Positions 25,034-48,712 of a stretch of 64,000 bases of DNA are shown one piece after another. The position numbers and the translations under genes are program-made. The DNA comes from Schmidtea polychroa. Its lineage: Eukaryota. The notes below the pieces were generated by a model. The model worked only from the letters and a program-made list of their open reading frames with translations. It did no database searches and had not been told where the DNA came from. The stretch covers positions 1,860,001 through 1,924,000 of the forward strand of contig CM097885.1 in assembly GCA_044892525.1 (NCBI GenBank). The letters run 5' to 3'. The first letter of the stretch is position 1, and each line of letters begins with the position of its first letter.

Positions 25034-28000
25034 ATGGACTTAAAACATTCTCTAGTTCAATTGTATAATAATTCTCATAGTCTTGTTAGACATCATTTAG
25101 ATTCGTTCAATCATTTTGTGGAAGTCGAAATGGAAAAAATTGTTAAAACTCACGGCCGTATTGATATGCCTTCTTCAAAGTTTTTTGTGCAAATTTCTAA
25201 TATAAAAGTGGAAAAGCCAGCGATATTTGAATATCAAATCAAAATCCCATTATATCCACAGCAATGCCGTATCCGGAATTTCACCTATGCAGCAGATGTC
25301 ACTGTTGACATTCAATATCCTGGAGCTGGAAATAAATTAATTAAAAATGAAAAATTTGTCATTGGTAGAATACCGATAATGTTGCGATCGAAAATGTGTA
25401 ATTTATATGGATTATCGAATGAAGAACTGACGAAAAAAGGCGAATGCATTTACGACACTGGTGGATATTTCATAACGAAAGGAACAGAGCGAGTGTTTCT
25501 AATGCAAGAACAAATGGCGAAAAATCGAATGATAATAGAAAAGTTCAAAATCACAAAGAAAGGAGGAATAAAAGTGCCTCTGTCAGAGAAAGTTCCCGAT
25601 GAAGATATCGTATGCCATGTGACGAGTTACACGGTTGTCAACAAAACCAAAACGACAGTATTTAGAAACAGCGGCTATTTCTACGTGCAAAACTCGCTAT
25701 TTCATGAATCGATCCCGCTATTCGTGATGTTTGCTGCGCTTAACATGCCCGTTCACAAGCAGATATTCGAATCGATCGGATTGGAGAGGGAATTGCATAA
25801 CGAGTTGATTAGCAGCGTTGAGGAGGCGATTGGATTGGGGATATTCTCTCAGCGGCAAGCGCTGATGTGGCTGATGCCGAGGATCAAATTGGCAATGAAC
25901 AAGGAGAACAGGATGACAACGAGCCCGACATCAATTGAGGAGGGGGAACGGGGCCTGCTGATGGCCAAGCAGGAGATCTGCAGGCGGGTAATCAATCACG
26001 TGCCCGGCAGCATCGACAATATGAGGTGCCGTGCCCAATATCTGGGCTTGATGACCCGGCGCATCCTATTGGCTGAGCACGGATTGATCGCTGCCGATGA
26101 TCGGGATTTCTATGGGATCAAGCGGCTGGAGATGGTGGGCACATATCTGGGCCTCATGTTTGAGGACAAGTTCCAATCGCTCGTCTCATCGCTACAGATG
26201 GAATTGACCAAGACGATCAATACCAATAAGGCCAATCAGCTCGACCCTACTCAATATATCCGCCAATCAATGATCACCGAGGGAATGTTCCAGTGCATAT
26301 TCACTGGCAATTGGCATTTGATGCGGTTCTCAATGGCCAGGAGCGGCGTTACCCAGGTACTCAACAGGCTCAGCTATCTCGGCACGCTTGGACATCTCGG
26401 CAGGATCAGCAGCCAATTTGAGAAGGTGCGCAAGATCTCAGGGGCGCGGGCAATCCATCTGAGCCAACACGGATTTGTGTGCGTTGCTGATACGCCAGAG
26501 GGGGAAGCGTGCGGATTGGTGAAGAATCTCGCGTTCCTGGTGGAGATCACTGTCAATTTGCCACCGGATGAACAGGAGCAGTTGGAGAGGTTCATCACGG
26601 CGGCCAATTGCAATGATCTCTCCACATTTCATCACCAATCCCGCATGCACATCATCATGGTCAATGGGGTACCGATTGGGTGGACACACCACCCAATGGC
26701 ATTGGCTAATTCACTGAGACACATGAGGAGAACAGGACTCATACATAGCCACGTATCGATATATTATGAGAGGAAGATGGACACGCTGCATATATGTAGT
26801 GACGGCGGCAGGATGGTTAGGCCCTATATAATCATTGAGAATGGATATAGCAAGCTGACCAATGACATTTATCAAGATATCATTAGCGGCATAGTGGATT
26901 GGGATGGGTTACTGAGCGGCGGCATTATTGAATATATCGATGCTTTGGAGGGTTACGCTGAATGTCTGATGGCATTTGATGAGTCACAGATCACCAGTAA
27001 CCATACACACCTTGATATAGATCCAGCAACAGCATTAGGGGTCGTAGCAAGTCTCATTCCATTCCCTCACCATAACCAATCGCCTAGGAATACATATCAA
27101 TGCGCTATGGGCAAGCAAGCCCTTGGAGTTATCTCCACCAATCAGAGCCAACGATGCGATGGCACACAACACAAATTGCTAGCTCCTCAACGCCCATTGA
27201 CAATGAGCAATGTTGGAACATTGACCAATTATCAATGTTTGCCTGCAGGACAGAATGCAATTGTAGCGATCCTTTGTTTCGGTGGCTATGATATTGAAGA
27301 TGCCATCGTTATCAATCGAAATTCTCTCGAACGCGGCCTTTTCAAGAGCTTGACCTCAAAATGTTTCACTGATGTTGTCAAGGACAATGAATATCTGGCA
27401 GTTCCCACTAGGAAAGGTATGATTAGATTCTATTGGTTGGTTGTGGTGTTGTTGGATATTACTGATTGATTGTGATATATTGGATATTATTGATTGATTG
27501 TGATATATTGGATATTATTGCTTGATTGTGATATATTGGATATTATTGATTGTGATATATTAGATATTATTGATTGTGATATATTGGATATTATTGATTG
27601 TTATATATTGGATATTATTGATTGTGATATATTGGATATTATTGATTGTGATATATTGGATATTATTGATTGTTATATATTGGATATTATTGATTGTGAT
27701 ATATTGGATATTATTGATTGGTTGTGATATATTGGATATTATTGATTGTGATATATTGGATATTATTGATTGGTTGTGATATATTGGATATTATTGATTG
27801 ATTGATGTATAGGATATTATTGATTGTGATATATATTGGATATTACTGATTGATTGTGATATATATTGGATATTATTGATTGATTGTGATATATTGGCTA
27901 TTATTGATTGGTTGTGATATATTGGATATGATTGATGTATTGGATATTATTGATTGATTGATATATTGGATATTATTGGTTGTGATTTATTGGATATTAT

Positions 28001-29486
28001 TGATTGTGATATATTGGATATTATTGATTGATTGTGATATATTGGATATTATTGATTGTGATTTATCGGATATTATTGATTGTGATTTATTGGATATTAT
28101 TGATTGTGATTTATTGGATATTATTGATTGTGATTTATTGGATATTATTGATTGATTGTGATATATTGGATATTATTGATTGATTGTGATTTATTGGATA
28201 TTATTGATTGTGATTTATTGGATATTATTGATTGATTGTGATTTATTGGATATTATTGATTGTGATTTATTGGATATTATTGATTGTGATATATTGGATA
28301 TTATTGATTGATTGATATATTGGATATTATTGATTGTGATATTATTGATTTTGATATATTGGATATTATTGCTTGTGATATATTGGATATTATTGATTGG
28401 TTGTGATATATTGAATATTATTGATTGGTTGTGATATATTGGATATTATTGATTGTATTGATTATCCTTCTAGACAGGCGACAGCACGCGATTCAAGAGG
28501 ATGGAATGGCCGCCATTGGATCTGTCATCAAGAACGGCGATGTTGTCATCAGCAAAATCGTGAACCCAGTCAAGGATCCCGTCGTAGCGAGTGACGCATC
28601 CACGGTCGTGGATCCGAAGCCGTCGCCAACGTGCTATTCTGGCAGCGAGCCAACTCGTGTTGTGGAGAATATGATGACATTTGATGGACATTACGGAATG
28701 GTCCGTGTGAAAACCACTCAAATGCGGCAGCCGGAAGTCGGTGATAAATTGAGCAGCCGGCACGGGCAGAAGGGGGTCATCAGCCGGGTGGTTGAGATGG
28801 TGGATATGCCTTGCACAGAGGATGGGCTGGTGCCGGATATTATCATGAATCCGCATGGATTCCCTAGCAGAATGACTGTAGGGAAACTGATTGAGCTGCT
28901 CGCCAATAAGAGCGCTGTAATGGACGGTAACTATAGGGACAGCTCAGCATTCAGTGACGCGGGGCACAAGAGCATTGATGGAGATTACCAATCGGTGATG
29001 AGAGCAAATGGGTTTGCCATGTCTGGTAAGGAGGTGATGGTGACAGGCAGTAACGGTGCGGTGATGGAGTGTGACGTGTACATGGGGCCCGTGTTCTATC
29101 AGCGCCTGAAGCACATGGTACAGGATAAGGTACACGCCAGGGATTTCGGCAAGAACCAGCAGTTGACGCGGCAACCGAATGTGGGCAGGTCCAATGACGG
29201 GGGGCTCAGGGTCGGTGAGATGGAGCGCGACTGTCTCATTGGTTACGGAGCATCGCAAATCCTCAAGGAGAGGATGATGCTGAGCAGTGACCCGTTCAGG
29301 GGCTGGGTGTGTGAGAAATGCGGCCTATTGGCTACCAGCAAGGATTGGTGCCAGATGTGCCGCTCCAGCCAGCACATCTCGTCCGTTGTCATGCCCTACG
29401 CCACTAAGCTATTGATGCAGGAACTCATGACCATCCAGATCACTCCCAGATTGACACTGTCCAGGAATGAGACAGCTGTTTTGTGA
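25034..29486 (+). CDS. POLR3B: RNA polymerase III second-largest subunit (RPC2), 1131 aa, 2 exons
   Basis: Exons 25034-27416 and 28474-29486 (AAAG|gtatga ... ttctag|AC); 3396 nt in frame. RPC2-type motifs: HHLDSFNHF, GVTQVLNRLSY, DTPEGEACGLVKNLA, HNQSPRNTYQCAMGKQA, SSRHGQKGV, IMNPHGFPSRMTVGKLIELLA, GEMERDCLIGYGAS, C-terminal CxxC...CxxC. Confidence 0.93.
27455..28460. repeat. ~24-bp minisatellite (GATTGTGATATATTGGATATTATT)n filling the POLR3B intron
   Basis: About 40 copies with +GATT/+GGTT variants; periodic ORFs (DCDILDII)n. Confidence 0.95.
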
Positions 29487-29540
29487 ATAAATATTATCGT
29501 TTGTTATTTTGTCTTTTGTTCTTTCATGAATTGGAGCTGA

Positions 29541-29922
29541 TTGGTTGATTGTGGGAGATGAATACAGCTCATTGGTTGATTGCGGGAGATGAATACAGCT
29601 CATTGGTTGATTGCGGGAGATGAATACAGCTCATTGGTTGATTGCGGGAGATGAATACAGCTCATTGGTTGATTGCGGGAGATGAATACAGCTCATTGGT
29701 TGATTGCGGGAGATGAATACAGCTCATTGGTTGATTGTGGGAGATGAATACAGCTCATTGGTTGATTGTGGGAGATGAATACAGCTCATTGGTTGATTGC
29801 GGGAGATGAATACAGCTCATTGGTTGATTGCGGGAGATGAATACAGCTCATTGGTTGATTGTGAGAGATGAATACAGCTCATTGGTTGATCGTGGGAGAT
29901 GAATACAGCTCATTGGTTGATT
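29541..29922. repeat. 31-bp minisatellite (TTGGTTGATTGCGGGAGATGAATACAGCTCA) x12 downstream of the POLR3B stop
   Basis: Exact 31-nt period from 29541 to 29913. Confidence 0.95.
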
Positions 29923-32900
29923 GAGGTTGATTGATTTCCATTTTTATGAATTGATAGTGAAGTAAATAAGAAATATCCAAATCAGTGTTAAATCCAGGTG
30001 CCCCGAGTAAGAATTTCGAAGACCTATTTTTAATCTTAATACAGGTAGCCAGAATCCGAACGGAAGCGTTCATTTTTCAGTATTAGAACTATGTGAAGGT
30101 CGATTAAGATTTGAATGAAAAAGAAAATTCAAAATGCCTAATAAATCGGCTTGAGGTACATGGTTTAGCCCTGAGCAGATGAATCAAAGCAATTTTGAAT
30201 TTTCGATATCCCTTGTAGAAGTTGCTTAGGATTTGCAGTAACAGATAAACTTCGAAATAAAAGGTTTCTAGGAACGTTTGTCAATTTTTTGAAAGTAAAT
30301 TTTAGAGGATAGATTTAGGAAACATTGTTACCTATTTCTTAGTAGCGTACATTTCTAGTATTCCCATTTTCTATTTCTCACCTTAGAGCGAAGCTGTAGA
30401 CAAATTAGAATCCAGCTCTCACCATTTTAGAAATACCTGAGAATGGCTGGACAAAACCGATATCTTTGCTTTAGGATATTTTAGCGGCGTTTTTTAATAA
30501 AAAATTTATTTGTGTTATTGAATTTAATTGTGAGTAAACCGTATTGCACATTTATATCTAAATAAAATGTTTACTTTCGAAATTGTTTTATTTTAGTCAA
30601 TTTAACGCGCAGAATCGTTTGGAGTCAGATTTGATTGCGTTAGACGCATAAGCCGCATTTAATCTTACCAATGTAATTATATTTAATTTCTGCTCACATT
30701 TTGATTTATCAGGTTTTCAATTATTTATATTTTCATTTGTGATGATTTTAAGACACTCCATAAATAGTAGGACAAATGGATAATGAACAGCGATATAATG
30801 ATGGCACGGTAAACAAACGCTTCACCACATATCCTGGGAAAAATCCTACTGGCATAAATTCAAGTGGAACAGTCGAATAAAATGGTTGGGAACAGTGGCA
30901 TGGGGAGGGTGTGTGGCACACTGAATTGATCTATTACTCTATACCTTGAATTACAAGGCTGGTCGACCAACAATGTACTCAGTGGAGGTCAAACGGAACT
31001 TAATTGTGAAACCAAGGAGGTGAGCATGGACAAGCTTGTGTAGATGCTCAAGTAGAGAAAATTAAAACTAATACATAGGCCAAGGTCAACAGAAGCTATA
31101 AATTTAAAAAGCCAAGTTATTCAAAAGAAATAAATGAATGACAAATGATGTTAAGCAGCTAAATAAATGAAGAAATAGATCATCATATGATGGGTATTGC
31201 AGAATCATGAAAAGATGAGCCAGAACCGAGAAATGAGTGAAAGTAGCACACCGAACTTATCAAACAATATAGAAAGCTCACTGACAATACGAATGCAAGA
31301 GTTCAGAAATTCATCAACATTGCAGCCAAATCAACAACAATACCGCTGAGTAGCAAGAAAATTAAAACGGTAACAAATTTCTGTGCCAAGCTTTACAACA
31401 CAAATCCAAATGACAGACGCGTTGGAGGCTCCATGTTAGAGCAAAGGCCTTTAAGGGATAAATGGCTTGATCGTGAGCTTACCAAAATAGAAGGATTTGA
31501 TGGCTGAGTATCATATTAAAGGATTAAAGGATACGGCATGGTAAAAGGCTTAAAAGGAATTAATAATTGCCTGAATCTTGAACCACCGACAATACCAACA
31601 GTGAAAGAATCGAAAATCAACAAAAATCGGGGGAACACAAATGAAAATATAAACATGGATATAATAATTATAAATCGAGGGGGGTCACTAGGCAATGCTA
31701 TTGAACAATTACAATAATCAAACATTTGGGTGCCTGAACTTGAGATTACCCTATCAAGCAGTAAAGCAAATAAGATTTGGCGTCAACCAATACTAGGGGG
31801 CGCGCAAAATTAATTTAATTGACGTCAGGCAATCAGACAAATGAGAAATGATTGATGAGAATGCGTTCAGTAACATGGGAGCCGGATTCGGTGAGTAATA
31901 CGAGAAAGGTGGGGGGGGGGGGACTACAAGATTTACAGGAATTAGAATCTGGCCCATTACGTCAGAGGATTGATAGAATTCAGGTTGGGATTTGTTTGAG
32001 GGGGTTTCCTATCGGGTTGCATGGGAATATAATATTATTATTATCATTTCTATCTGTCTTGTTGCACTTACTTTTGTTATAAAGGCTAATATCATCTTCC
32101 ATCAGACCTAATCAAGATCCTTGTGATTAATTTCTCATTTTATTTATACTACATTTTGTCAACAAAAGAAGTCCCAACTAAACCATAGAAAATGATACGC
32201 TGTAAACCTGCCTCGGTTCAACTGATCTTGGATTCGCCTTTCAGCTGGTTGAGATTTTATGCGCATTTATCACATATCTTTCATTGGCATATCACAAGCA
32301 TTCAATTAGCTCACAGCAATTCATGACAACCGCTGGGTTTACCTTTTATGAAGCATGATAACCCTTTACCTTTACCCTTTTATAAATATCAAGCTGCCGT
32401 TATCACGCCCTGACCAGCATATCAGAAATAGTGACACTCTGTAATGATTGCCAGTACTGTGACTTGGTAATTGAGCCTCACATAATTACCATTGATCAAG
32501 GGTTACACATTGTCACCAGCCCAAATGACAATGCCACCCCCCCCCCCCCCCATTATACACTATAATAATAAATAGGCAGCTCAGTGATGACTCACATACT
32601 GCTCATAATGTGTATCATAAATTTATCCAATCACAAGAGCGGTAAACAAGTGGAACGCGAGATCAGCCGACAGCCAATCAGAAAATGCTAAAGCCAATAG
32701 CAATATTATGGGATGGAGAATGTTGTAACAATGAATGTGATAGATAGACAATAATCAATTCATCATAATCAATCAACCAATTAATCAATTAACCAATACA
32801 GCACATCAATGCTTAGTAACGGCCTTGACAACCAATTAATTGGATCATGTGATCACCAACAGTATGGCATCCATCCAATCAGCTGACCACATGTGCAAAT

Positions 32901-33047
32901 CATCAATTCAGATCACCAGCGATTCTCAGTGAAATAATCCGACAAATGCAACGCTCAATCACAGCGCTGCGAAACGCAAATATATCAATTCATAATTAAT
33001 ATAATAATTATTATGCACAAATAATTTGTATCGTGCCAGCCTCATCA

Positions 33048-33441
33048 TCACACTGAGATAAATATTTGCTTCACATACATGATATAGCTGACCACGGTCC
33101 AGAAGGTCACGCCCCAGATGTTCAGGATCAAGCTGTACACATGGTCATGCGCATATGAATTGATTGGCCATTGAGCTGGGAACCTTTTCTCCATGATGAT
33201 GTGCCCAATATATATGGCAATTGAGTTCATTCCTAGTAGCAATAATAATTCCTAGCACCACCAATACCAATGGCCTCACCTTGATACTTGAAGGGCGCCC
33301 CTGACCATATCTGCAGCACATCAACTATAACGAATATGAAACCCAATAAGAAAAAGCCCATTCCCCCCGTTACTAACACGAATGACACAGACCTATATCA
33401 ATAATATTTATTTATTATTAGTTAATAATAATTATAATTTA

Positions 33442-33494
<53 letters not shown>

Positions 33495-36400
33495 TTTATT
33501 ATTATTTATGTATTTCTTCTTCTTACTATTTATTTTTTATTTTTATTATTTATTTTTATTATTTTTTTTTTATTTTTAATATTATCACAATAATAATAAT
33601 AATAATAATATAAATTACCATAAATTCTTGTTGAGTGGAATGAGGCCTTCATTAATCTGACATTGGCAGAGGCCGGCTCCAATCGCGGCCTATTAGAAAT
33701 AGAAATGAGAATAAAAGAAAAGAGGATCAGAGAAAACCTACACACACGATTGCATAAATGAACAGTCGCTTGATGATGGCAACCCAATTGCGGTTCAGCA
33801 GCAAGACGTTGCCAGCCTAAAATATAAGGATCTTAAAGCAAGCCACTGGCTTTTGCAAGTGGGGAACACAGAGAGGAAAGCCAAAATCGAGCTAACCATC
33901 CCCTCCATTCACCCAGCACACAAAGGGATGTGCTCACCATCCCCTCCATTCACCCAAGGATCAGCAATCCAGCACACAAAGGGATGCGCTCACCATCCCC
34001 TCCATTCACTCAGCACACAAAGGGATGTGCTCACCATCCCCTCCATTCACCCAAGGATCAGCAATCCAGTACACAAAGGGATGCTCTCACCCTCCCCTCA
34101 CTCGACCCGCCCACCGGCAATACCAGAAAACAGCCTCACCCAGAACCCGATCAAGCAAAGAGCTGCTGAGGTAATATTGCCAAGAATGCCTTCTGGATCG
34201 TAGCGTTGCGAGGGCTCATAAAGCTTCCAACTGGTCGATCTGACATACATGTGATCAGGAGTGAGAATAAGCCGATCGATATAACCGGCAACTCCACCAG
34301 AGCAATTGCTACAACAGCCATGATCACCTATTCCTCCTGGACCTAGATATCCACGGGGACAGCCTGGCACCACCAGCAATAAGGAAATACACGCATGGCA
34401 CACCAGCATTCCTAGAGTAAGAGTGAAATCAACCAATCAAATTCCAATATCAATTGACATACCAACAGCCAGACAAATATAAGGTAGACATTTCCATAGA
34501 TCCGCCATGGCTTCACGGCATTTGCAGGAGAGAGAGCTGCGTTCTGTATAATTGATCTCATTTGGAGGGCTCTGTAGGAGGTCAGATTCAATATCATTGG
34601 ATAGCAATGACTGTCGGGTACAATTACACGCTGACACGATGCAAATCACACTTGTAAGCCACAAATATGAGATAGCCAGCCTTTGCAATGGTCCCATGAT
34701 TCGGAGCTGCCACAATTCCTTACCAGGATTCTCTAATGCAATACCTATCATAAACAATAACGCTGATCGCTTGACTGATTTCAACCAGAAATGGATGAGG
34801 AACTTTCTGCTGATCCGTTTGAGCGTTGCCCTGTAAATATCAGATGATGATACTAATGATGAGGAATATGCATTTGTCTCATGGTTGTCAGCAAGGGTGG
34901 GTGGGGGCTAGGGAGGTGATGATGAGATTGGCTGTCAGCTAGGGAGGTGATGATGAGATTGGCTGTCAGCTAGGGAGGTGATGATGAGATTGGCTGTCAG
35001 CTAGGGAGGTGATGATGAGATTGGCTGTCAGCTAGGGAGGTGATAATGGGATTGGCTGTCAGCTAGGGAGGTGATGATGAGATTGGCTGTCAGCTAGGGA
35101 GGTGATGATGAGATTGGCTGTCAGCTAGGGAGGTGATGATGAGATTGGCTGTCAGCTAGGGAGGTGATGATGAGAAACACCAAATCTGCACCCCATCAGC
35201 CATCATTACACATGCATGCCACATGAATGCCACCGTCAGGCCCATCACAAACAAAAACACAGGCACAGCATCCCCATCCCCATCAGCCCCCCCCCAACAA
35301 CAACAACAGCAACAACTGAATGCATACCGATAGAAACTGAATGCCACCGTCAGCCCCATCACAAACACAGGCACAGCATCCCCATCCCCATCAGCCCCCC
35401 CCCCCAAACAACAACAACAACAACAACAACTGAATGCATACCGATAGAAACTGAATGCCACCGTCAGGCCCATCACAAACACAAACACAGGCACAGCATC
35501 CCCATCCCCATCCCCATCAGCCCCCCCCCCCCCAACAACAACAACAGCAACAACTGAATGCATACCGATAGAAACTGAATGCCACCGTCAGCCCCATCAC
35601 AAACACAGGCACAGCATCCCCATCCCCATCAGCCCCCCCCCAACAACAACAACAGCAACAACTGAATGCATACCGATAGAAACTGAATGCCACCGTCAGG
35701 CCCATCACAAACACATGCACAGCATCCCCATCCCCATCAGCCCCCCCCCCAACAACAACAACAACAGCAACAACTGAATGCATACCGATAGAAACTGAAT
35801 GCCACCGTCAGCCCCATCACAAACACATGCACAGCATCCCCATCCCCATCCCCATCAGCCCCCCCCCCCCCCAACAACAACAGCAACAACTGAATGCCAC
35901 CGTCAGGCCCACCACAAACACAGGCACAGCATCCCCATCCCCATCAGCCCCCCCAAACAACAACAACAGCAACAACTGAATGCATACCGATAGAAACTGA
36001 ATGCCACCGTCAGGCCCATCACAAACACAGGCACAGCATCCCCATCCCCATCAGCCCCCCCCCCCCCCCAAACAACAACAACAGCAACAACTGAATGCAT
36101 ACCGATAGAAACTGAATGCCACCGTCAGGCCCATCACAAACACAGGCACAGCATCCCCATCCCCATCAGCCCCCCCCCCAAACAACAACAACAGCAACAA
36201 CTGAATGCATACCGATAGAAACTGAATGCCACCGTCAGGCCCATCACAAACACAAGCACAGCATCCCCATCCCCATCAGCCCCCCCCCAAACAACAACAA
36301 CAGCAACAACTGAATGCATACCGATAGAAACTGAATGCCACCGTCAGGCCCATCACAAACACAGGCACAGCATCCCCATCCCCATCAGCCCCCCCCCCCC

Positions 36401-37890
36401 CCCAAACAACAACAACAGCAACAACTGAATGCATACCGATAGAAACTGAATGCCACCGTCAGCCCCATCACAAACACAGGCACAGCATCCCCATCCCCAT
36501 CAGCCCCCCCCCCCAACAACAACAACAGCAACAACTGAATGCATACCGATAGAAACTGAATGCCACCGTCAGGCCCATCACAAACACATGCACAGCATCC
36601 CCATCCCCATCCCCATCAGCCCCCCCCCCCCAACAACAACAGCAACAACTGAATGCCACCGTCAGGCCCACCACAAACACAGGCACAGCATCCCCATCAG
36701 CCCCCCCCAAACAACAACAACAGCAACAACTGAATGCATACCGATAGAAACTGAATGCCACCGTCAGGCCCATCACAAACACAGGCACAGCATCCCCATC
36801 CCCATCAGCCCCCCCCAAACAACAACAACAGCAACAACAACAACTGAATGCATACCGATAGAAACTGAATGCCACCGTCAGGCCCATCACAAACACAGGC
36901 ACAGCATCCCCATCCCAATCAGCCCCCCCCAAACAACAACAACAGCAACAACTGAATGCATACCGATAGAAACTGAATGCCACCGTCAGGCCCACCACAA
37001 ACACAGGCACAGCATCCCCATCCCCATCAGCTCCCCCCCAACAAAAACAACAGCAACAACTGAATGCATACCGATAGAAACTGAATGCCACCGTCAGGCC
37101 CATCACAAACACAGGCACAGCATCCCCATCCCCATCAGCCCCCCCAAACAACAACAACAGCAACAACTGAATGCATACCGATAGAAACTGAATGCCACCG
37201 TCAGGCCCATCACAAACACAGGCACAGCATCCCCATCCCCATCAGCCCCCCCCCCCCAACAACAACAACAACAACAACAGCAACAACTGAATGCCACCGT
37301 CAGGCCCATCACAAACACAGGCACAGCATCCCCATCCCCATCAGCCCCCCCCAAACAACAACAACAACAACAACAACAACTGAATGCATACCGATAGAAA
37401 CTGAATGCCACCGTCAGGCCCATCACAAACACAGGCACAGCATCCCCATCCCCATCAGCCCCCCCCCCCCCAACAACAACAACAGCAACAACTGAATGCA
37501 TACCGATAGAAACTGAATGCCACCGTCAGGCCCATCACAAACACAGGCACAGCATCCCCATCCCCATCAGCCCCCCCCCCCAACAACAACAGCAACAACT
37601 GAATGCCACCGTCAGGCCCATCACAAACACAGGCACAGCATCCCCATCCCCATCAGCCCCCCCCAAACAACAACAACAACAACAACAACAACTGAATGCA
37701 TACCGATAGAAACTGAATGCCACCGTCAGGCCCATCACAAACACAGGCACAGCATCCCCATCCCCATCAGCCCCCCCCCAAACAACAACAACAGCAACAA
37801 CTGAATGCATACCGATAGAAACTGAATGCCACCGTCAGGCCCATCACAAACACAGGCACAGCATCCCCATCCCCATCAGCCCCCCCCCCC

Positions 37891-37921
<31 letters not shown>

Positions 37922-38118
37922 TGAATGCATACCGATAGAAACTGAATGCCACCGTCAGGCCCATCACAAACACAGGCACAGCATCCCCATCCCCATCAGC
38001 CCCCCCCCCAAACAACAACAACAACAACTGAATGCATACCGATAGAAACTGAATGCCACCGTCAGGCCCATCACAAACACAGGCACAGCATCCCCATCCC
38101 CATCAGCCCCCCCCCCCC

Positions 38119-38149
<31 letters not shown>

Positions 38150-39831
38150 TGAATGCATACCGATAGAAACTGAATGCCACCGTCAGGCCCATCACAAACA
38201 CAAACACAGGCACAGCATCCCCATCCCCATCAGCCCCCCCCCCCAACAACAACAAAAACAACAACAACTGAATGCATACCGATAGAAACTGAATGCCACC
38301 GTCAGCCCCATCACAAACACAGGCACAGCATCCCCATCCACATCAGCCCCCCCCCCCCAACAACAACAACAACAACAGCAACAACTGAATGCCACCGTCA
38401 GCACCATCACAAACACAGGCACAGCATCCCCATCCCCATCCCCATCAGCCCCCCCCAACAACAACAACAACAGCAACAACTGAATGCATACCGATAGAAA
38501 CTGAATGCCACCGTCAGGCCCACCACAAACACAGGCACAGCATCCCCATCCCCATCCCCATCCCCATCAGCACCCCCCCCCCAACAACAACAGCAACAAC
38601 TGAATGCCACCGTCAGGCCCACCACAAACACAGGCTCCCCATCCCCATCCCCATCAGCACCCCCCCCAACAACAACAGCAACAACTGAATGCCACCGTCA
38701 GGCCCATCACAAACACAGGCACAGCATCCCCATCCCCATCAGCCCCCCCCCCCCCCCAACAACAACAACAACAACTGAATGCATACCGATAGAAACTGAA
38801 TGCCACCGTCAGGCCCATCACAAACACAGGCACAGCATCCCCATCCCCATCAGCCCCCCCCCCCCCAACAACAACAACAACAACTGAATGCATACCGATA
38901 GAAACTGAATGCCACCGTCAGGCCCATCACAAACACAGGCACAGCATCCCCATCCCCATCAGCCGCCCCCAACAACAACAACAACAACAACAGCAACAAC
39001 TGAATGCATACCGATAGAAACTGAATGCCACCGTCAGCCCCACCACAAACACAGGCACAGCATCCCCATCCCCATCAGCCCCCCCAAACAACAACAACAG
39101 CAACAACTGAATGCATACCGATAGAAACTGAATGCCACCGTCAGGCCCATCACAAACACAGGCACAGCATCCCCATCCCCATCAGCCCCCCCCCCCCCAA
39201 CAACAACAACAACAACAACAGCAACAACTGAATGCCACCGTCAGGCCCATCACAAACACAGGCACAGCATCCCCATCCCCATCAGCCCCCCCCAAACAAC
39301 AACAACAACAACAACAACAACTGAATGCATACCGATAGAAACTGAATGCCACCGTCAGGCCCATCACAAACACAGGCACAGCATCCCCATCCCCATCAGC
39401 CCCCCCCCCCCAACAACAACAACAGCAACAACTGAATGCATACCGATAGAAACTGAATGCCACCGTCAGGCCCATCACAAACACAGGCACAGCATCCCCA
39501 TCCCCATCAGCCCCCCCCCCCAACAACAACAGCAACAACTGAATGCCACCGTCAGGCCCATCACAAACACAGGCACAGCATCCCCATCCCCATCAGCCCC
39601 CCCCCAAACAACAACAACAACAACAACAACAACTGAATGCATACCGATAGAAACTGAATGCCACCGTCAGGCCCATCACAAACACAGGCACAGCATCCCC
39701 ATCCCCATCAGCCCCCCCCCAAACAACAACAACAGCAACAACTGAATGCATACCGATAGAAACTGAATGCCACCGTCAGGCCCATCACAAACACAGGCAC
39801 AGCATCCCCATCCCCATCAGCCCCCCCCCCC

Positions 39832-39862
<31 letters not shown>

Positions 39863-40057
39863 TGAATGCATACCGATAGAAACTGAATGCCACCGTCAGG
39901 CCCATCACAAACACAGGCACAGCATCCCCATCCCCATCAGCCCCCCCCCCAAACAACAACAACAACAACTGAATGCATACCGATAGAAACTGAATGCCAC
40001 CGTCAGGCCCATCACAAACACAGGCACAGCATCCCCATCCCCATCAGCCCCCCCCCC

Positions 40058-40088
<31 letters not shown>

Positions 40089-42368
40089 TGAATGCATACC
40101 GATAGAAACTGAATGCCACCGTCAGGCCCATCACAAACACAAACACAGGCACAGCATCCCCATCCCCATCAGCCCCCCCCCCCCCAACAACAACAAAAAC
40201 AACAACAACTGAATGCATACCGATAGAAACTGAATGCCACCGTCAGCCCCATCACAAACACAGGCACAGCATCCCCATCCACATCAGCCCCCCCCCCCCA
40301 ACAACAACAACAACAACAGCAACAACTGAATGCCACCGTCAGCACCATCACAAACACAGGCACAGCATCCCCATCCCCATCCCCATCAGCCCCCCCCAAC
40401 AACAACAACAACAGCAACAACTGAATGCATACCGATAGAAACTGAATGCCACCGTCAGGCCCACCACAAACACAGGCACAGCATCCCCATCCCCATCCCC
40501 ATCCCCATCAGCACCCCCCCCCCAACAACAACAGCAACAACTGAATGCCACCGTCAGGCCCACCACAAACACAGGCTCCCCATCCCCATCCCCATCAGCA
40601 CCCCCCCCAACAACAACAGCAACAACTGAATGCCACCGTCAGGCCCATCACAAACACAGGCACAGCATCCCCATCCCCATCAGCCCCCCCCCCCCCCAAC
40701 AACAACAACAACAACTGAATGCATACCGATAGAAACTGAATGCCACCGTCAGGCCCATCACAAACACAGGCACAGCATCCCCATCCCCATCAGCCCCCCC
40801 CCCCCAACAACAACAACAACAACTGAATGCATACCGATAGAAACTGAATGCCACCGTCAGGCCCATCACAAACACAGGCACAGCATCCCCATCCCCATCA
40901 GCCGCCCCCAACAACAACAACAACAACAACAGCAACAACTGAATGCATACCGATAGAAACTGAATGCCACCGTCAGCCCCACCACAAACACAGGCACAGC
41001 ATCCCCATCCCCATCCCCATCAGCCCCCCCCCCAAACAACAACAACAACAACTGAATGCATACCGATAGAAACTGAATGCCACCGTCAGGCCCATCACAA
41101 ACACAAACACAGGCACAGCATCCCCATCCCCATCCCCATCAGCCCCCCCCCCCAACAACAACAGCAACAACTGAATGCATACCGATAGAAACTGAATGCC
41201 ACCGTCAGGCCCATCACAAACACAAACACAGGCACAGCATCCCCATCCCCATCAGCCCCCCCCCCAAACAACAACAACAACAACAACAACAACTGAATGC
41301 ATACCGATAGAAACTGAATGCCACCGTCAGCCCCATCACAAACACAGGCACAGCATCCCCATCCCCATCAGCCCCCCCCCCCCCCCCCCAACAACAACAG
41401 CAACAACTGAATGCATACCGATAGAAACTGAATGCCACCGTCAGGCCCATCACAAACACAGGCACAGCATCCCCATCCCCATCAGCCCCCCCCAACAACA
41501 ACAACAACAACAACAACAGCAACAACTGAATGCATACCGATAGAAACTGAATGCCACCGTCAGGCCCATCACAAACACAGGCACAGCATCCCCATCCCCA
41601 TCAGCCCCCCCCCCCAACAACAACAGCAACAACTGAATGCATACCGATAGAAACTGAATGCCACCGTCAGGCCCATCACAAACACATGCACAGCATCCCC
41701 ATCCCCATCAGCCCCCCCCCCCAACAACAACAGCAACAACTGAATGCATACCGATAGAAACTGAATGCCACCGTCAGGCCCATCACAAACACAAACACAG
41801 GCACAGCATCCCCATCCCCATCAGCCCCCCCCAACAACAGCAACAACTGAATGCATACCGATAGAAACTGAATGCCACCGGCAGGCCCACCACAAACACA
41901 GGCACAGGCACAGCATCCCCATCCCCATCAGCCCCCCCCAACAACAGCAACAACTGAATGCATACCGATAGAAACTGAATGCCACCGGCAGGCCCACCAC
42001 AAACACAGGCACAGCATCCCCATCCCCATCAGCCCCCCCCCAAACAACAACAACAACAACAACAACAACTGAATGCATACCGATAGAAACTGAATGCCAC
42101 CGGCAGGCCCACCACAAACACAGGCACAGCATCCCCATCCCCATCAGCCCCCCCCCCAACAACAACAGCAACAACTGAATGCATACCGATAGAAACTGAA
42201 TGCCACCGTCAGGCCCATCACAAACACAAACACAGGCACAGCATCCCCATCCCCATCAGCCCCCCCCAACAACAGCAACAACTGAATGCATACCGATAGA
42301 AACTGAATGCCACCGGCAGGCCCACCACAAACACAGGCACAGCATCCCCATCCCCATCAGCCCCCCCC

Positions 42369-42399
<31 letters not shown>

Positions 42400-43718
42400 T
42401 GAATGCATACCGATAGAAACTGAATGCCACCGGCAGGCCCACCACAAACACAGGCACAGCATCCCCATCCCCATCAGCCCCCCCCCCCAAACAACAACAA
42501 CAACTGAATGCATACCGATAGAAACTGAATGCCACCGTCAGGCCCATCACAAACACAGGCACAGCATCCCCATCCCCATCAGCCCCCCCCCCCCCAAACA
42601 ACAACAACAGCAACAACTGAATGCATACCGATAGAAACTGAATGCCACCGGCAGGCCCACCACAAACACAGGCACAGCATCCCCATCCCCATCAGCCCCC
42701 CCCCCCCCCCCAAACAACAACAACAACTGAATGCATACCGATAGAAACTGAATGCCACCGTCAGCCCCATCACAAACACAGGCACAGCATCCCCATCCCC
42801 ATCCCCATCAGCCCCCCCCCAACAACAACAACAACAACTGAATGCATACCGATAGAAACTGAATGCCACCGTCAGGCCCATCACAAACACAAACCACGGA
42901 AACACCAAATCCGCTACAGTCAGCCCATTCCATGCTGAATGCGCCATGAAATAGTAATTGCCGCCTCCATAATTCACAAATATCATCAGCATGATTGAGA
43001 TGCCCCGCAACGTATCGACTCCCTTCACGCGTTTCACCACCGACGATTCCGACCGCTACCAATGCAAAGATCAATCAACCCAAATTGTAACTAGGCAACC
43101 AACTAAGTGGCTGTCGGTATCAACCAACCTTCACAGAGGTGAAATTGACCTCCTCCTCAGTCAATGCAGGCGTGGCAATTGATGGATTACCGAGATCTAT
43201 ATAGGAATCAACCTGGTAGAGGAACACCCTTGAAAGGAGCCTATGGATCAATCGGTGACGGATAATCAATAATCCAGTATAGAAGAGAGCAGCACAAAGA
43301 CTCAATGCCACCAGAGCGATATAGAAAGGCATCATGAAATCACTAGTCTCACCATAGGGGATCATTATACACTTGATTGTATCATTTCCTTGCATCATAT
43401 CCCGGTTGACAATGGAATAATTATATTGCTTATACTCAATTAATTTCCACCGAGCTCTGATTGGTTCAAATTCATTCAACCGATTCAATGAAAATGATTG
43501 AATTACTTGCAAAGGGATCCATTAACAATTTTGTCTCGGCTATCCATTCGGTGAATCAAGATCTGGAACCACATGTTAGATATAATTGACAAATTTAAGC
43601 TGCTTGAGGCGTTTACGGATACATTTTTCATTAAACAATTGAAGCATTCGATATATTGAAATTGAAATAACAAACTGGCGTTTAGTTGGTTAATCAAATG
43701 GAAATTCACAATATCCAT
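33048..43718 (-). CDS. HGSNAT: Heparan-alpha-glucosaminide N-acetyltransferase, ~609 aa, 9 exons
   Basis: Exons 43718-43507, 43456-43129, 43055-42850, 34830-34463, 34411-34140, 33816-33742, 33689-33619, 33392-33280, 33232-33048; 1830 nt, phases consistent. Motifs: [86 protein letters not shown]. The start codon and exon 2 donor are less certain. Confidence 0.9.
33890..34095. repeat. Degenerate 38/56-bp tandem repeat in HGSNAT intron 5
   Basis: About 4 units of ccatcccctccattcaccc...cacacaaagggatgtgctca. Confidence 0.85.
34911..35174. repeat. 31-bp minisatellite (GGGAGGTGATGATGAGATTGGCTGTCAGCTA) x8.5 in HGSNAT intron 3
   Basis: Exact 31-nt period from 34911 to 35159. Confidence 0.95.
35224..42890 (-). 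repeat. ~7.7 kb compound satellite (~85-115-bp unit, roughly 70-75 copies) derived from the HGSNAT exon 3/intron 3 junction
   Basis: Unit on minus strand: GTGTTTGTGATGGGCCTGACGGTGGCATTCAGTTTCTATCG|GTATGCATTCAG(TTG)n-Gn-CTGATGG(GGATGG)nGGATGCTGTGCCT. The first part is the coding end of exon 3 ([14 protein letters not shown]). Confidence 0.93.
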
Positions 43719-46311: not shown

Positions 46312-48712
46312 TCATTTCTTAGGCTTGCTGGAGTAATCATAGAATCCCTTTCCGGATTTCTGACCGAGCTTCTTGTCGGCAACCATTTTGTCCAGCAACC
46401 CAATCGGACTGAACAGGGGATTCTCTGGGAATTTTTCGTGCCACCCGTCAAGAATGAATTTAGTCGTGTCGAGGCCAACATAATCCGCCAATGCAAGCGG
46501 GCCCATGGGATACCCAGCTCCCAGTCGCATGGCAACATCGATATCCTCACAGGTGGCCTCCCCGCGATCCAACATGCGTAACGCCTCACCAATATAGGGC
46601 ACCAATAACCGATTGACAATAAATCCCGGCGTGTCTCGGCACTTGACCGCAGTTTTGCCCACCGATTTCACAAACCCCATAAGAGCCTACCAATTATTCA
46701 ATGATATACATGAGACAAGCAGTAGCAGCAAGCCAATGGATGAGCTGCAGCATTTTGTAATGAGCATGGGACATGTAGCACTAGTAGATAGATAGGAGGG
46801 CTCCAGCCCAAAAGGAATCTTCGACTCTCACAATTTTTTGGTCAAATAGGGGGAGGCACGCTTCTTAGGTGACTTCTTCCCCGTTCCTGACAACCCCCGA
46901 TACATTTTTGTTTTAATCAGTGATTGCATAATATTTTCACGGTTGTTACGTCATAAATTTATATTTTTCATAAGAACTTCAAAGTAGCGATTGGCCGAAA
47001 CTAAATTCCCCATTTAATGCGCCTATGACGTAATCAACATTTTTAGTACAGAATTTTGAATTTATATATCAATTTAGCAAACTTGAGATATTTTCACTCA
47101 AACAATATATAGATAGAATTTAATTCTCTACAAAATGGCATCTTTATTTATGTCAAATTCACACCAATAGCTCCATAAACACGGTTAATTCACTCGCATT
47201 TGATTGGCTATCAGTAAGCAATGCGATATATTCCACATAATCATGCAATGTAACGGTCACAATTGTTGCCCCTCCCCTCCCCTCCCAGCTGGGATATTGA
47301 TGGATAATTCATGACTAGCTAGACTCTGTATGAGCTGTAATCTCCCCCCCCCCCCCATTAACGCCAGCGCATTCATAAGCACAGTTGCCATAGCTACAGA
47401 TAACTGCCACCGAATCCCTTTGCTCATTCAATCATGCATTCAATAGCGCAAAAGCAATTGCTACAATCATTATCATACTCATTCTCACCTCTGTCGTGTT
47501 GCTGCTGGTGTTGCCAGTGGAAACCACCTCAACCAATCCCATCACGGGCACCGGGTTAAAGAAATGCAGCCCTCCGAATCTGTCCTGCCTGTTGGTTGCG
47601 ACAGCCATTTCTGCAATCGATAGCGATGAAGTGTTGCTGGCAAATATGCAGTCAGCGGGGGCCACCTCATCGAGACTCCTGGAACAGAACCGCAATTAAT
47701 GGGGATCATTGCTAATATGGATGATTGCAAATACAGCACTGATGCATGCAGTAACCAAGGGAAACACGCCCCTCCTCCTGCTGGTCTCCCCCTCTCTCTA
47801 TTCCAATGAATAATGATTGAATCATCCAATCCATTTGCCTATCAACAGGGAAATATTTGCCCATTATCGATCTTACCGAGATTGCTAGCAACAGCACAAT
47901 TTGCTCGCGCAAATCCCCACAATCGTCACTGGATAAGCAATAATAATATTTCATTCACTCAATTGATACAATTCCGCTCAATAATTGTTGTCAATAACGG
48001 CCTCGACTTTGGCCGCTAATATCACGAATCGGTATCAGAGTCCACAGGTCAATCAATGCAGATACTCATATGACGCGTGTAAATAAATTGCTAGCACTAA
48101 TTACAGCAATTACAAATGAGATCCCTTACTAATGGCTCATTCATATTCATATATTACTCCATATTTGATTTTTCATTAATAATTTGCTTCCACTTTCCCA
48201 ACACAGCCAAAATATGCCAAACAAATATAATGAGAATAATGTAAAAGGTATTACACAATAATAATAATAATACGTAATTATAATCATTTGAATGCAAATT
48301 AATATTAAAATATTACAATTATGAAAGAAACTAACTTAAATAGTTTATTTTTAATTCCTATATTTTCAATTATCGCTTCAATTATTAAGTCTGATTTTTT
48401 TGCCGCTTCATTACTATTAGTTGAAGTTTGAATTAATTGTAAACTGGTTTCAACAAATTTCTCCTGTTCATCAATTTTATCAGCAAGCTTTTTTGCCGCA
48501 ACTCGTTTTAAATTAACTTTGATTTTTTCCATTGCTTTCTGCAAAAGACTTTCGTCTACATCTATCAAATTCACTTTATAGCCGCTTTGTGCTGATATTT
48601 GTGCTATTCCTGATCCCATCAATCCACATCCTATAACAGTTATGGTCTTCATCGAACGAGTTATATTATAAGTAAAACTAGATCGGCAAGCAGAATTAAA
48701 AATTCGAAACAT
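46312..48712 (-). CDS. HADH: Mitochondrial short-chain 3-hydroxyacyl-CoA dehydrogenase, 313 aa, 3 exons
   Basis: Exons 48712-48336, 47678-47489, 46686-46312; 942 nt in frame. Motifs: targeting-peptide-like N-terminus, [75 protein letters not shown]. Confidence 0.95.

What the first reader, a model, noticed from the sequence alone, without database searches (positions are those of the whole stretch)
35224..42890. A satellite made of an exon end and its own splice donor: ~60 tandem 5' splice sites in HGSNAT intron 3
Seen: the repeat unit begins with the last ~40 coding nt of exon 3 ([14 protein letters not shown]) and continues through the CG|GTATGC donor into (TTG)n, a G run and (GATGGG)n. The donor phase (2) matches the acceptor at 34830, so the first copy is the real exon end. 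By eye there are ~70-75 units, about 12 of which lack the donor-bearing 21 nt. The first unit reads through in frame (ORF 43040-42579). Inference: the spliceosome must choose among dozens of identical exon-context donors. Use of a downstream copy would add a Cys/Gly-rich linker plus a duplicated hydrophobic segment, or cause a frameshift and NMD. This could act as a copy-number-tunable expression or isoform dial, or as a substrate for recursive splicing (each unit also has CAG 9 nt before the GT).
Basis: partly seen in the sequence, partly recalled or inferred. Interest (0 to 1): 0.82.

Follow-up and report, generated by a model that had tools for sequence, protein, structure and literature searches.

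The report
Intron minisatellite repeating a splice donor
An 8-kb intron of a lysosomal-enzyme gene (HGSNAT-like) is filled by about 70 tandem copies of the preceding exon's end, 57 of which repeat its splice donor exactly; this is a large, apparently strain-specific example of a known kind of repeat ("mirage" minisatellites), and there is no evidence that it regulates anything.

Summary
On the minus strand, 35224-42891 holds 70 units of 85-124 nt plus one truncated unit. Fifty-eight carry an identical 20-nt exon-end/GT-donor motif, made up of the real donor and 57 copies. Twelve units lost 21 nt by deletion between two GCATTCAGTT repeats. The array occurs nowhere else in the 781-Mb genome.

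The gene is HGSNAT-like. Spliced RNA contigs from two studies join the first donor (42850|42849) to the acceptor at 34830. Those RNAs carry six SNPs of a different haplotype. Its DNA-like contig runs unbroken through the exon end into other intron sequence, so that haplotype most likely has no array. Splicing of the array-bearing allele is therefore untested.

Only pseudo-donor 2 would keep the frame (+37 aa). Donors 3-58 all meet one stop codon.

The kind is already described: human F7, IFI6, CBS, LMNB2 and PDGFA minisatellites, and amphioxus "mirages". In those genes the authentic donor is used, and in two of them the next two sites as well.

The recursive-splicing idea fails, because no AG|GT is juxtaposed and there is no pyrimidine tract. 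The "dial" idea has no support.

A 1.9-kb block of the array is duplicated almost perfectly and may be an assembly artefact.

Verdict: a real, young, probably neutral array and a new member of a known kind.

The parts
43129..43456 (-).
   Evidence: RNA contigs in X8 and X9 show joints at 43456/43507 (50-nt intron) and 43055/43129 (73-nt intron).
42850..43055 (-). Exon 3 (206 nt). It encodes the conserved HGSNAT segment ...FVNYGGG...[14 protein letters not shown]...
   Evidence: RNA contigs cover 42849-43055. Homologues are named heparan-alpha-glucosaminide N-acetyltransferase. The alignment has 22 invariant columns. Pfam PF07786 and PF16401 match weakly, below their cut-offs.
42844..42852 (-). 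Authentic 5' splice site, TCG|GTATGC
   Evidence: mRNA contigs from two studies stop matching at 42849. They continue with the reverse complement of 34829-34800, which is the start of exon 4 (table 7; sequence).
34831..42849 (-). Intron 3, 8019 nt, GT...AG. The other introns of this gene are about 47-73 nt, with two longer ones of roughly 200-320 nt.
35224..42891 (-). Boundary-spanning minisatellite: 70 units plus 1 truncated unit, 57 pseudo-donors plus the real one. The sense strand is 42% G and 36% T and carries 65 G-quadruplex motifs.
   Evidence: It is the only locus in the genome.
42733..42741 (-). Pseudo-donor 2 (G of GT at 42738). It is the only pseudo-donor that would give an in-frame product (+111 nt, 37 aa).
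   Evidence: Frame computation.
42579..42581 (-). Stop codon met by any transcript that uses donors 3-58
37104..39001 (-). Higher-order block A of about 18 units. It has no substitutions against block B and differs from it only in six C-run lengths.
39044..40940 (-). Higher-order block B, the copy of block A. It is either a very recent unequal exchange or an assembly duplication.
35174..35219 (-). Diverged distal edge of the array. It resembles exon 3 positions 42942-42899 (GCATTCAG...GATTTGGTGTTTC). Its donor-like position reads GGCATGC, not GGTATGC.
   Evidence: Local alignment score 18 against a shuffle mean of 10; 0.17% of 3000 shuffles reach it.
42899..42942 (-). Exonic counterpart of the distal edge. 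It begins with the first of three GCATTCAG words (42942, 42866, 42845).
34907..35175 (-). Second array in the same intron: 31 nt x 8.7 copies. Each unit reads CTGAC, then 27 nt of C/T/A-rich sequence, then TAG, which looks like a branch site plus acceptor. It is unique to this locus.
34463..34830 (-). Exon 4. Its start is verified by RNA. Its end is inferred from the frame and from homology.

Best explanation
This is a 'mirage'-type minisatellite, a tandem array whose first monomer is the authentic end of exon 3 plus its 5' splice site.

Origin (inferred). The array arose by misaligned replication or unequal exchange between short direct repeats at the exon/intron boundary. GCATTCAG occurs three times there, and a ~46-nt exon-like segment bounds the far end. 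Unequal exchange then expanded and homogenised it to about 70 units (7.7 kb) in the haplotype that was assembled. That inflated an originally short intron to 8 kb. The array is young and probably neutral or slightly harmful. Another haplotype of the same species appears to lack it, and 12 units have lost the donor by a 21-nt slippage deletion.

Splicing. The normal mRNA joins the first donor to 34830 (shown, but in the other haplotype). I infer that the array-bearing allele does the same. The first donor is transcribed first and is paired across a 206-nt exon with its upstream acceptor, as in human F7, LMNB2 and PDGFA. The 57 pseudo-donors would be silent or used rarely. Use of donor 2 would insert 37 aa. 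Use of any other gives a premature stop and probably decay of the transcript.
For: - Array anatomy and exactness of the 58 donors.
- Unique locus and single-copy gene.
- The duplicated exon end is conserved HGSNAT coding sequence, so the repeat derives from the exon and not the reverse.
- Spliced contigs from two RNA studies join 42850 to 34830.
- Haplotype difference. X5, X8 and X9 share six SNPs that X1 lacks. The 1326-nt intron-containing X5 contig (kind guessed as DNA) crosses the exon end without a break and leaves the reference at 42823. The sequence it runs into is absent from the assembly. X5-X7 hold 0.17-0.22 of the sampled words, which is below the 0.33 expected for a copy with identical flanks and no array.
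- The 21-nt loss is flanked by GCATTCAGTT.
- The edge unit is diverged while the interior is homogenised, as described for mirages.
- Precedents where only the first site is used, or the first site plus the next two.
- Frame consequences.
- In the same-strain run X1, 270 short variant contigs lie on the units at a summed depth of 17,000-37,000, against 94-314 on the flanks. The tool warns that this is not a copy number.
Against: - No RNA from the array-bearing haplotype was available, so first-donor use there is inferred, not shown.
- In IFI6 and CBS the two pseudo-sites nearest the authentic donor are used constitutively. Here donor 2 is in frame.
- This gene's other introns are mostly tiny. 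If they are recognised by intron definition, that might favour donors near the acceptor.
- The 39-nt core around the donor is invariant in every unit that has it, while flanking columns carry some variants. This weak hint could mean constraint rather than recent homogenisation.
- Absence of the array from the other haplotype rests on contig topology and word shares, not on a read-through assembly.
- In X8, a 38-nt exon-end/donor contig has depth 32, against 10 for its one laid continuation. This is unexplained.
Confidence: 0.7

Rival explanations
1. Expression or isoform dial. In the array-bearing allele the spliceosome uses downstream pseudo-donors at a meaningful rate. Array length would then set how much productive HGSNAT mRNA is made, or would produce a +37-aa isoform.
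For: All 58 donors have an identical 39-nt context. Each is followed by G-runs; from general knowledge of mammalian splicing, G-runs downstream of a donor enhance its use. Donor 2 is in frame. IFI6 and CBS use their two nearest pseudo-sites. The last donor lies only about 500 nt from the acceptor.
Against: No transcript evidence exists for any pseudo-donor, although that evidence comes from the other haplotype. [quoted passage not shown] Twelve units lost the donor, and the array seems absent from another haplotype, so there is no sign of selection. A +37-aa product would add a hydrophobic segment to a multi-pass membrane enzyme and is unlikely to be functional (inference).
Confidence: 0.12
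2. The array is real but its length is inflated by the assembly. The near-perfect 1.9-kb duplication, or more of the array, is an artefact.
For: Blocks 37104-39001 and 39044-40940 differ only in homopolymer lengths, a pattern typical of long-read error. Only collapsed contigs were available, so length could not be checked.
Against: Outside that block the units vary aperiodically in length and in point variants. An independent short-read contig set of the same strain shows 270 variant contigs on the units at very high summed depth. Recent unequal exchange produces exactly such blocks in real arrays.
Confidence: 0.2
3. The array has a function unrelated to donor choice. Examples: a G-quadruplex/R-loop element that slows or marks transcription, or a U1-binding platform that retains or protects the long pre-mRNA.
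For: There are 65 G4 motifs on the sense strand, against 5 in the remaining 56 kb on that strand. The sense strand is 42% G, and the GC skew is about -0.55 on the plus strand. There are 58 U1-type sites and no poly(A) signal anywhere in the intron.
Against: The G-rich parts are microsatellite-like and the most length-variable parts of the unit. No RNA secondary-structure signal was found (z = +1.1) and no Rfam family. The array is apparently dispensable in another haplotype. The lack of poly(A) signals follows from 9% A alone.
Confidence: 0.05

Closest known systems
Human F7 intron 7 minisatellite of 37 bp (Borensztajn et al. 2006, PMC1557585)
   Same: The first monomer spans the exon-intron boundary, so the authentic donor is followed by identical pseudo-donors. 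The array is polymorphic in length. Only the most upstream site is used.
   Different: F7 has 5-9 repeats with 4 exonic nt per unit. Here there are ~70 units of ~110 nt carrying ~47 or more exonic nt, with 57 pseudo-donors spread over 7.7 kb. Splicing of this array-bearing allele has not been observed.
Human IFI6 (6-16) intron 2 minisatellite, and CBS intron 13 minisatellite (both as summarised in PMC1557585)
   Same: Many reiterated donors (25 pseudo-sites in 6-16; 15-20 repeats in CBS) begin at the exon boundary.
   Different: [quoted passage not shown] Here the only in-frame option is donor 2 (+37 aa), and no use of it has been seen.
Human LMNB2 (100 bp x 10-15) and PDGF intron 4 (81 bp x 16-18) minisatellites (as summarised in PMC1557585)
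   Same: Similar unit length (~100 bp), boundary-spanning, and only the authentic donor is used.
   Different: Copy number here is four to five times higher. The organism is an AT-rich invertebrate-like genome with mostly 50-70-nt introns.
Amphioxus 'mirages' in Adh3 and the globin genes BflGb6/9 (Ebner et al. 2010, PMC3087553)
   Same: Minisatellite-like duplications of exon/intron boundaries. The haplotypes differ in copy number, the interior evolves in concert, and the edge units are excluded from homogenisation. Normal splicing is not disturbed.
   Different: The amphioxus arrays have 2-6 units in the globin genes. Here there are ~70, and the alleles appear to differ by presence or absence rather than by a few units.
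Recursive splice sites (ratchet points) of long Drosophila and vertebrate introns
   Same: Both are internal intronic 5' splice sites that could in principle allow stepwise intron removal.
   Different: Ratchet points need a pyrimidine tract and an AG directly abutting the GT. Here the AG is 9 nt upstream and is preceded by G-rich sequence, so every step would leave a 9-nt footprint. None is seen.

Membership tests
Boundary-spanning ('mirage') minisatellite | Head-to-tail tandem array of 10-200-nt units lying in an intron | tested here: met
   TRF periods 107-116; 70 units of 85-124 nt at 35224-42891, inside intron 34831-42849.
Boundary-spanning ('mirage') minisatellite | The first monomer contains the authentic exon end and its splice site | tested here: met
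   Unit homology starts within exon 3 at about 42896 and runs through the donor at 42850|42849. That donor is the one used in mRNA contigs.
Boundary-spanning ('mirage') minisatellite | The splice-site sequence is reiterated identically in downstream units | tested here: met
   58 exact copies of a 20-mer across the donor; a 39-nt core is invariant.
Boundary-spanning ('mirage') minisatellite | The authentic site remains the one used for the normal mRNA | tested here: inconclusive
   Met in RNA contigs of two studies. Those carry the SNPs of a haplotype that seems to lack the array. No RNA of the array allele was available.
Boundary-spanning ('mirage') minisatellite | Length polymorphism between alleles | tested here: met
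   The X5 contig leaves the reference 27 nt into the intron and crosses the exon end unbroken. Word shares of 0.17-0.22 compare with 0.65-0.71 in same-strain runs. The evidence is indirect, from contigs only.
Boundary-spanning ('mirage') minisatellite | Concerted evolution of interior units, with diverged edge units | tested here: met
   Interior columns are 90-100% identical. The distal edge 35219-35174 is diverged and closer to the exon's upstream part.
Recursive splice site (ratchet point) | A 3' splice site (pyrimidine tract + AG) directly abutting a GT donor | tested here: not met
   The CAG lies 9 nt before the GT. The upstream sequence GTGATGGGCCTGACGGTGGCATT is G-rich.
Recursive splice site (ratchet point) | Lariat or junction intermediates | not testable with these tools
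   Only collapsed contigs were available, from another haplotype.
HGSNAT (heparan-alpha-glucosaminide N-acetyltransferase) orthologue | Sequence homology of the exons to named HGSNAT proteins | tested here: met
   114 hits with E down to 7e-21, several named HGSNAT and carrying PF07786/PF16401. The alignment shows invariant FVNYGGG...[13 protein letters not shown]. Later exons read [15 protein letters not shown] and YDPEGILG. Single exons score below the Pfam cut-offs.

The most novel reading that the evidence does not exclude
In animals homozygous for the array allele, a substantial share of HGSNAT pre-mRNA is spliced from pseudo-donors, which lie nearer the acceptor in a genome built for tiny introns. 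That would yield mostly stop-containing transcripts. The array would then be a natural, length-variable hypomorphic allele of a lysosomal enzyme gene. It would also be an in-vivo test bed with 58 identical donors over 7.7 kb for how 5' splice sites are chosen.
Probability: 0.12. Interest if true: 0.6.

Novelty: new member of a known kind. Interest (0 to 1): 0.36.

Why it matters
With 57 exact pseudo-donors it has more than twice as many as any case named in the two papers read here (25 in IFI6). It sits in a species for which public data already seem to include a haplotype with the array and one without. That pair could test whether 'first donor wins' holds over kilobases and outside mammals. 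It could also show whether such arrays cost the host gene any expression.

For annotation it is a warning. Short junction reads carry only about 47 nt that are shared by all units, so aligners can place them on any unit and invent pseudo-donor usage.

Otherwise it is an ordinary product of minisatellite turnover in a genome rich in intronic minisatellites.

Tried and rejected
- Orthologous introns. A search with the 153-aa read-through ORF found only distant HGSNAT pieces (69% identity or less, apart from a few very short matches, and over exon 3 only). It found neither the window's own ORF nor any close relative, so no related intron could be fetched.
- Naming the organism. The neighbouring RPC2 exon gave one unnamed 72% hit and otherwise mostly under 50% (at most 56%), so no taxon could be assigned.
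- The other haplotype's intron. Its first 30 letters are absent from the window and from the whole assembly at up to 3 mismatches, and no second copy or haplotig of the locus exists. Its in-register likeness to the unit is 21/30, which exceeds all 500 shuffles. A free local alignment is not significant (p = 0.16). I treat homology as likely but unproven.
- RNA structure masking the pseudo-donors. MFE is -100.9 against -105.7 for shuffles, z = +1.1. Rejected.
- A known RNA hosted in the intron. No Rfam match at gathering score.
- Plus-strand repeat ORFs (Pro/Thr/His-rich, up to 244 aa). They are by-products of the repeat, and no transcript supports them.
- Copy number from contig depth. The tool states that summed contig depth is not a copy number, so I used it only as a qualitative sign of many variant copies.
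- The reverse origin, with the exon end captured from a pre-existing satellite. Rejected because the satellite exists nowhere else and the exon end is conserved coding sequence.
Full report

Yes. Tandem Repeats Finder reports one array at 35224-42891 with periods of 107-116. Read on the minus strand, which is the gene's sense strand, exon sequence runs into CG|GTATGC. It is then followed by (TTG)n, a G run, (GATGGG)n and a new copy of the exon end.

The 20-mer spanning the donor occurs 58 times, all exact. Allowing two mismatches adds no further copies, against 0 expected by chance.

Cutting at an invariant anchor gives 70 units of 85-124 nt and a truncated 71st. Twelve full units lack 21 nt. 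The missing piece lies between two copies of GCATTCAGTT, so it is a simple slippage deletion.

A search of the 781-Mb assembly found the unit only here. The flanking gene parts and the rest of the intron are also single copy. No N runs lie in the region.

**2. The gene and its splicing**

- **Identity.** The exon before the array encodes ...[11 protein letters not shown]...[28 protein letters not shown]. Its homologues include proteins named heparan-alpha-glucosaminide N-acetyltransferase and carrying PF07786/PF16401. The alignment shows 22 invariant columns and continues through the duplicated segment. The exon end is therefore old coding sequence, and the repeat derives from it. Downstream exons read like HGSNAT too.
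- **RNA evidence.** Contigs of two runs from different studies (X8, X9) were laid on 42300-43600. They show two clean GT..AG joints (43456/43507 and 43055/43129), which proves they are spliced RNA. They stop matching at 42849. Their next 30 letters are the reverse complement of 34829-34800 (sequence). One G is shared by both sides, so the junction is 42850|34830 with a GT...AG intron of 8019 nt.
- **Intron sizes.** The gene's other introns are about 47-73 nt, with two longer ones. Without the arrays this intron would be about 100-350 nt.

**3. Whose RNA is it?**

This is the main limit of the evidence.

- The mRNA contigs of X8 and X9 and a 1326-nt intron-containing contig of X5 (a third study, kind guessed as DNA) share six differences from the window. 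X1, from the study whose runs hold 65-71% of the region's words, has none of them.
- The X5 contig, and a low-depth unspliced contig in X8, follow the window through the donor and (TTG)5 to 42823. They then continue with sequence that is absent from the window and from the whole assembly.
- The X5 contig crosses the exon end without a break. In a k=31 graph that would not happen if near-identical copies of the exon end existed elsewhere in that genome.
- X5-X7 hold only 0.17-0.22 of the sampled words. A copy with identical flanks and no array would be expected to hold 0.33, and a copy with one extra unit 0.43.

I conclude that the other haplotype most likely has no array. Two things follow. 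The array is polymorphic and young. And the observed first-donor splice says nothing direct about the array-bearing allele.

X1 shows no sign of the other haplotype at the six sites. Animals of that sample are therefore probably homozygous for the array allele and viable.

**4. Anatomy of the array**

- **Homogeneity.** Interior units are very similar. A 39-nt core (GGTGGCATTCAG...GTATGCATTCAGTTGTTG) is invariant in all units that have it. A dozen other columns carry minority variants. Length variation is confined to (TTG)n, the G run and (GATGGG)n.
- **Higher-order block.** There is a repeat at an offset of 1941 nt. Blocks 37104-39001 and 39044-40940 have no substitutions between them and differ only by six C-run length changes. 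This is either a very recent unequal exchange or an assembly duplication. It could not be resolved, because only collapsed contigs were available.
- **Composition.** The sense strand is 42% G, 36% T, 12% C and 9% A. It carries 65 of the 70 G-quadruplex motifs found on that strand in the whole window. The intron has no AATAAA or ATTAAA.
- **Structure and RNA families.** The sense RNA folds no better than shuffles, and no Rfam family matches.

**5. Origin (inference)**

- The word GCATTCAG occurs three times in the native exon/intron boundary, at 42942, 42866 and 42845.
- The distal edge of the array (35219-35174) is a diverged copy of the exon segment that starts at the first of these words (42942-42899). 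The alignment score is 18 against a shuffle mean of 10, p about 0.002.
- At that edge the donor-like position reads GGCATGC.
- An array bounded by two diverged direct repeats, with a homogenised interior and decayed edge units, is the expected result of unequal exchange between short repeats followed by expansion. It is also what is described for amphioxus mirages.
- The G-rich part of the unit resembles the other haplotype's intron at the same register (21/30, above all shuffles). A free local alignment is not significant.

**6. What would pseudo-donor use do?**

Translating exon 3 through each donor into exon 4 shows that only donor 2 (42738, +111 nt) keeps the frame. It would insert 37 residues with a second copy of the hydrophobic segment. 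Donors 3 to 58 all run into the same stop at 42581-42579, far upstream of later junctions, and are therefore likely targets of nonsense-mediated decay (established knowledge).

**7. Most likely mechanism and its rivals**

By analogy with F7, LMNB2 and PDGF, I think the first donor wins. It is transcribed first and is defined together with the upstream acceptor across a 206-nt exon. The pseudo-donors probably bind U1 but stay unused, or are used at a low level that decay removes. I put this at about 0.7.

The dial reading (0.12) remains possible. IFI6 and CBS do use their two nearest pseudo-sites, donor 2 is in frame, and this genome's tiny introns suggest recognition across introns, which could favour donors near the acceptor.

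Recursive splicing is rejected as stated. The AG and the GT are 9 nt apart, the upstream sequence is G-rich, and each step would leave an in-frame 9-nt footprint that the mRNA contigs lack.

**8. Comparison with what is known**

The kind is well described. Borensztajn et al. 2006 (PMC1557585) list F7, IFI6, CBS, LMNB2 and PDGF as genes with minisatellites whose first monomer spans an exon-intron boundary. Ebner et al. 2010 (PMC3087553) describe amphioxus 'mirages' with haplotype differences, concerted evolution and diverged edges.

This case meets every structural criterion. It differs in three ways:
- scale, with 57 pseudo-donors over 7.7 kb;
- apparent presence/absence polymorphism;
- host genome.

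In my window TRF finds six separate large arrays in 64 kb, three of them in this gene's introns, which agrees.

**9. Verdict**

The feature is real and accurately described, but it is a new member of a known kind. The regulatory interpretation is unsupported, and the recursive-splicing part fails a defining test. Its value lies in being a natural experiment on donor choice, if RNA of the array-bearing strain is examined.

Noticed in passing
window 34907-35175 (minus strand): The same intron ends with a second locus-specific array, 31 nt x 8.7 at 98% identity. Each unit reads CTGAC, then 27 nt of C/T/A-rich sequence, then TAG, so it looks like a branch site plus acceptor. Its last unit merges into the real acceptor-proximal sequence (CTGACAACCAT...CTCATCATTAG). 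The intron thus carries about 57 pseudo-donors followed by about 9 pseudo-acceptors.
   Followed up: partly
window 33891-34126 (minus strand): The intron after exon 5 (donor CTGG|GTGAGG near 34135) holds 2-3 copies of a G-rich 41/56/97-nt repeat. The repeat contains donor-like CTGGGTGAA and GATGGTGAG words and the GGGGATGG motif. It may be a small second boundary-derived repeat in the same gene.
   Followed up: no
window 42823 and beyond, in runs X5 and X8: Another haplotype of the species leaves the reference 27 nt into the intron, and its sequence there is absent from the whole assembly. In X8 a 38-nt exon-end/donor contig has depth 32, while its one laid continuation has depth 10.
   Followed up: partly
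window 27452-28462 and 29535-29923: The C-terminal exon of an RNA polymerase III RPC2-like gene (28425-29486, plus strand; Pfam E 1e-74) is flanked on both sides by minisatellites, 24/28 nt x ~39 and 31 nt x 12.5. The upstream array runs into the ORF that contains the exon.
   Followed up: no
window 46312-48712 (minus strand): A 3-hydroxyacyl-CoA dehydrogenase gene lies here (3HCDH_N and 3HCDH Pfam domains), next to the HGSNAT-like gene.
   Followed up: no
window 4864-5605: A 15-nt minisatellite, 49.5 copies at 87% matches. It is one more of six large arrays in this 64-kb window.
   Followed up: no
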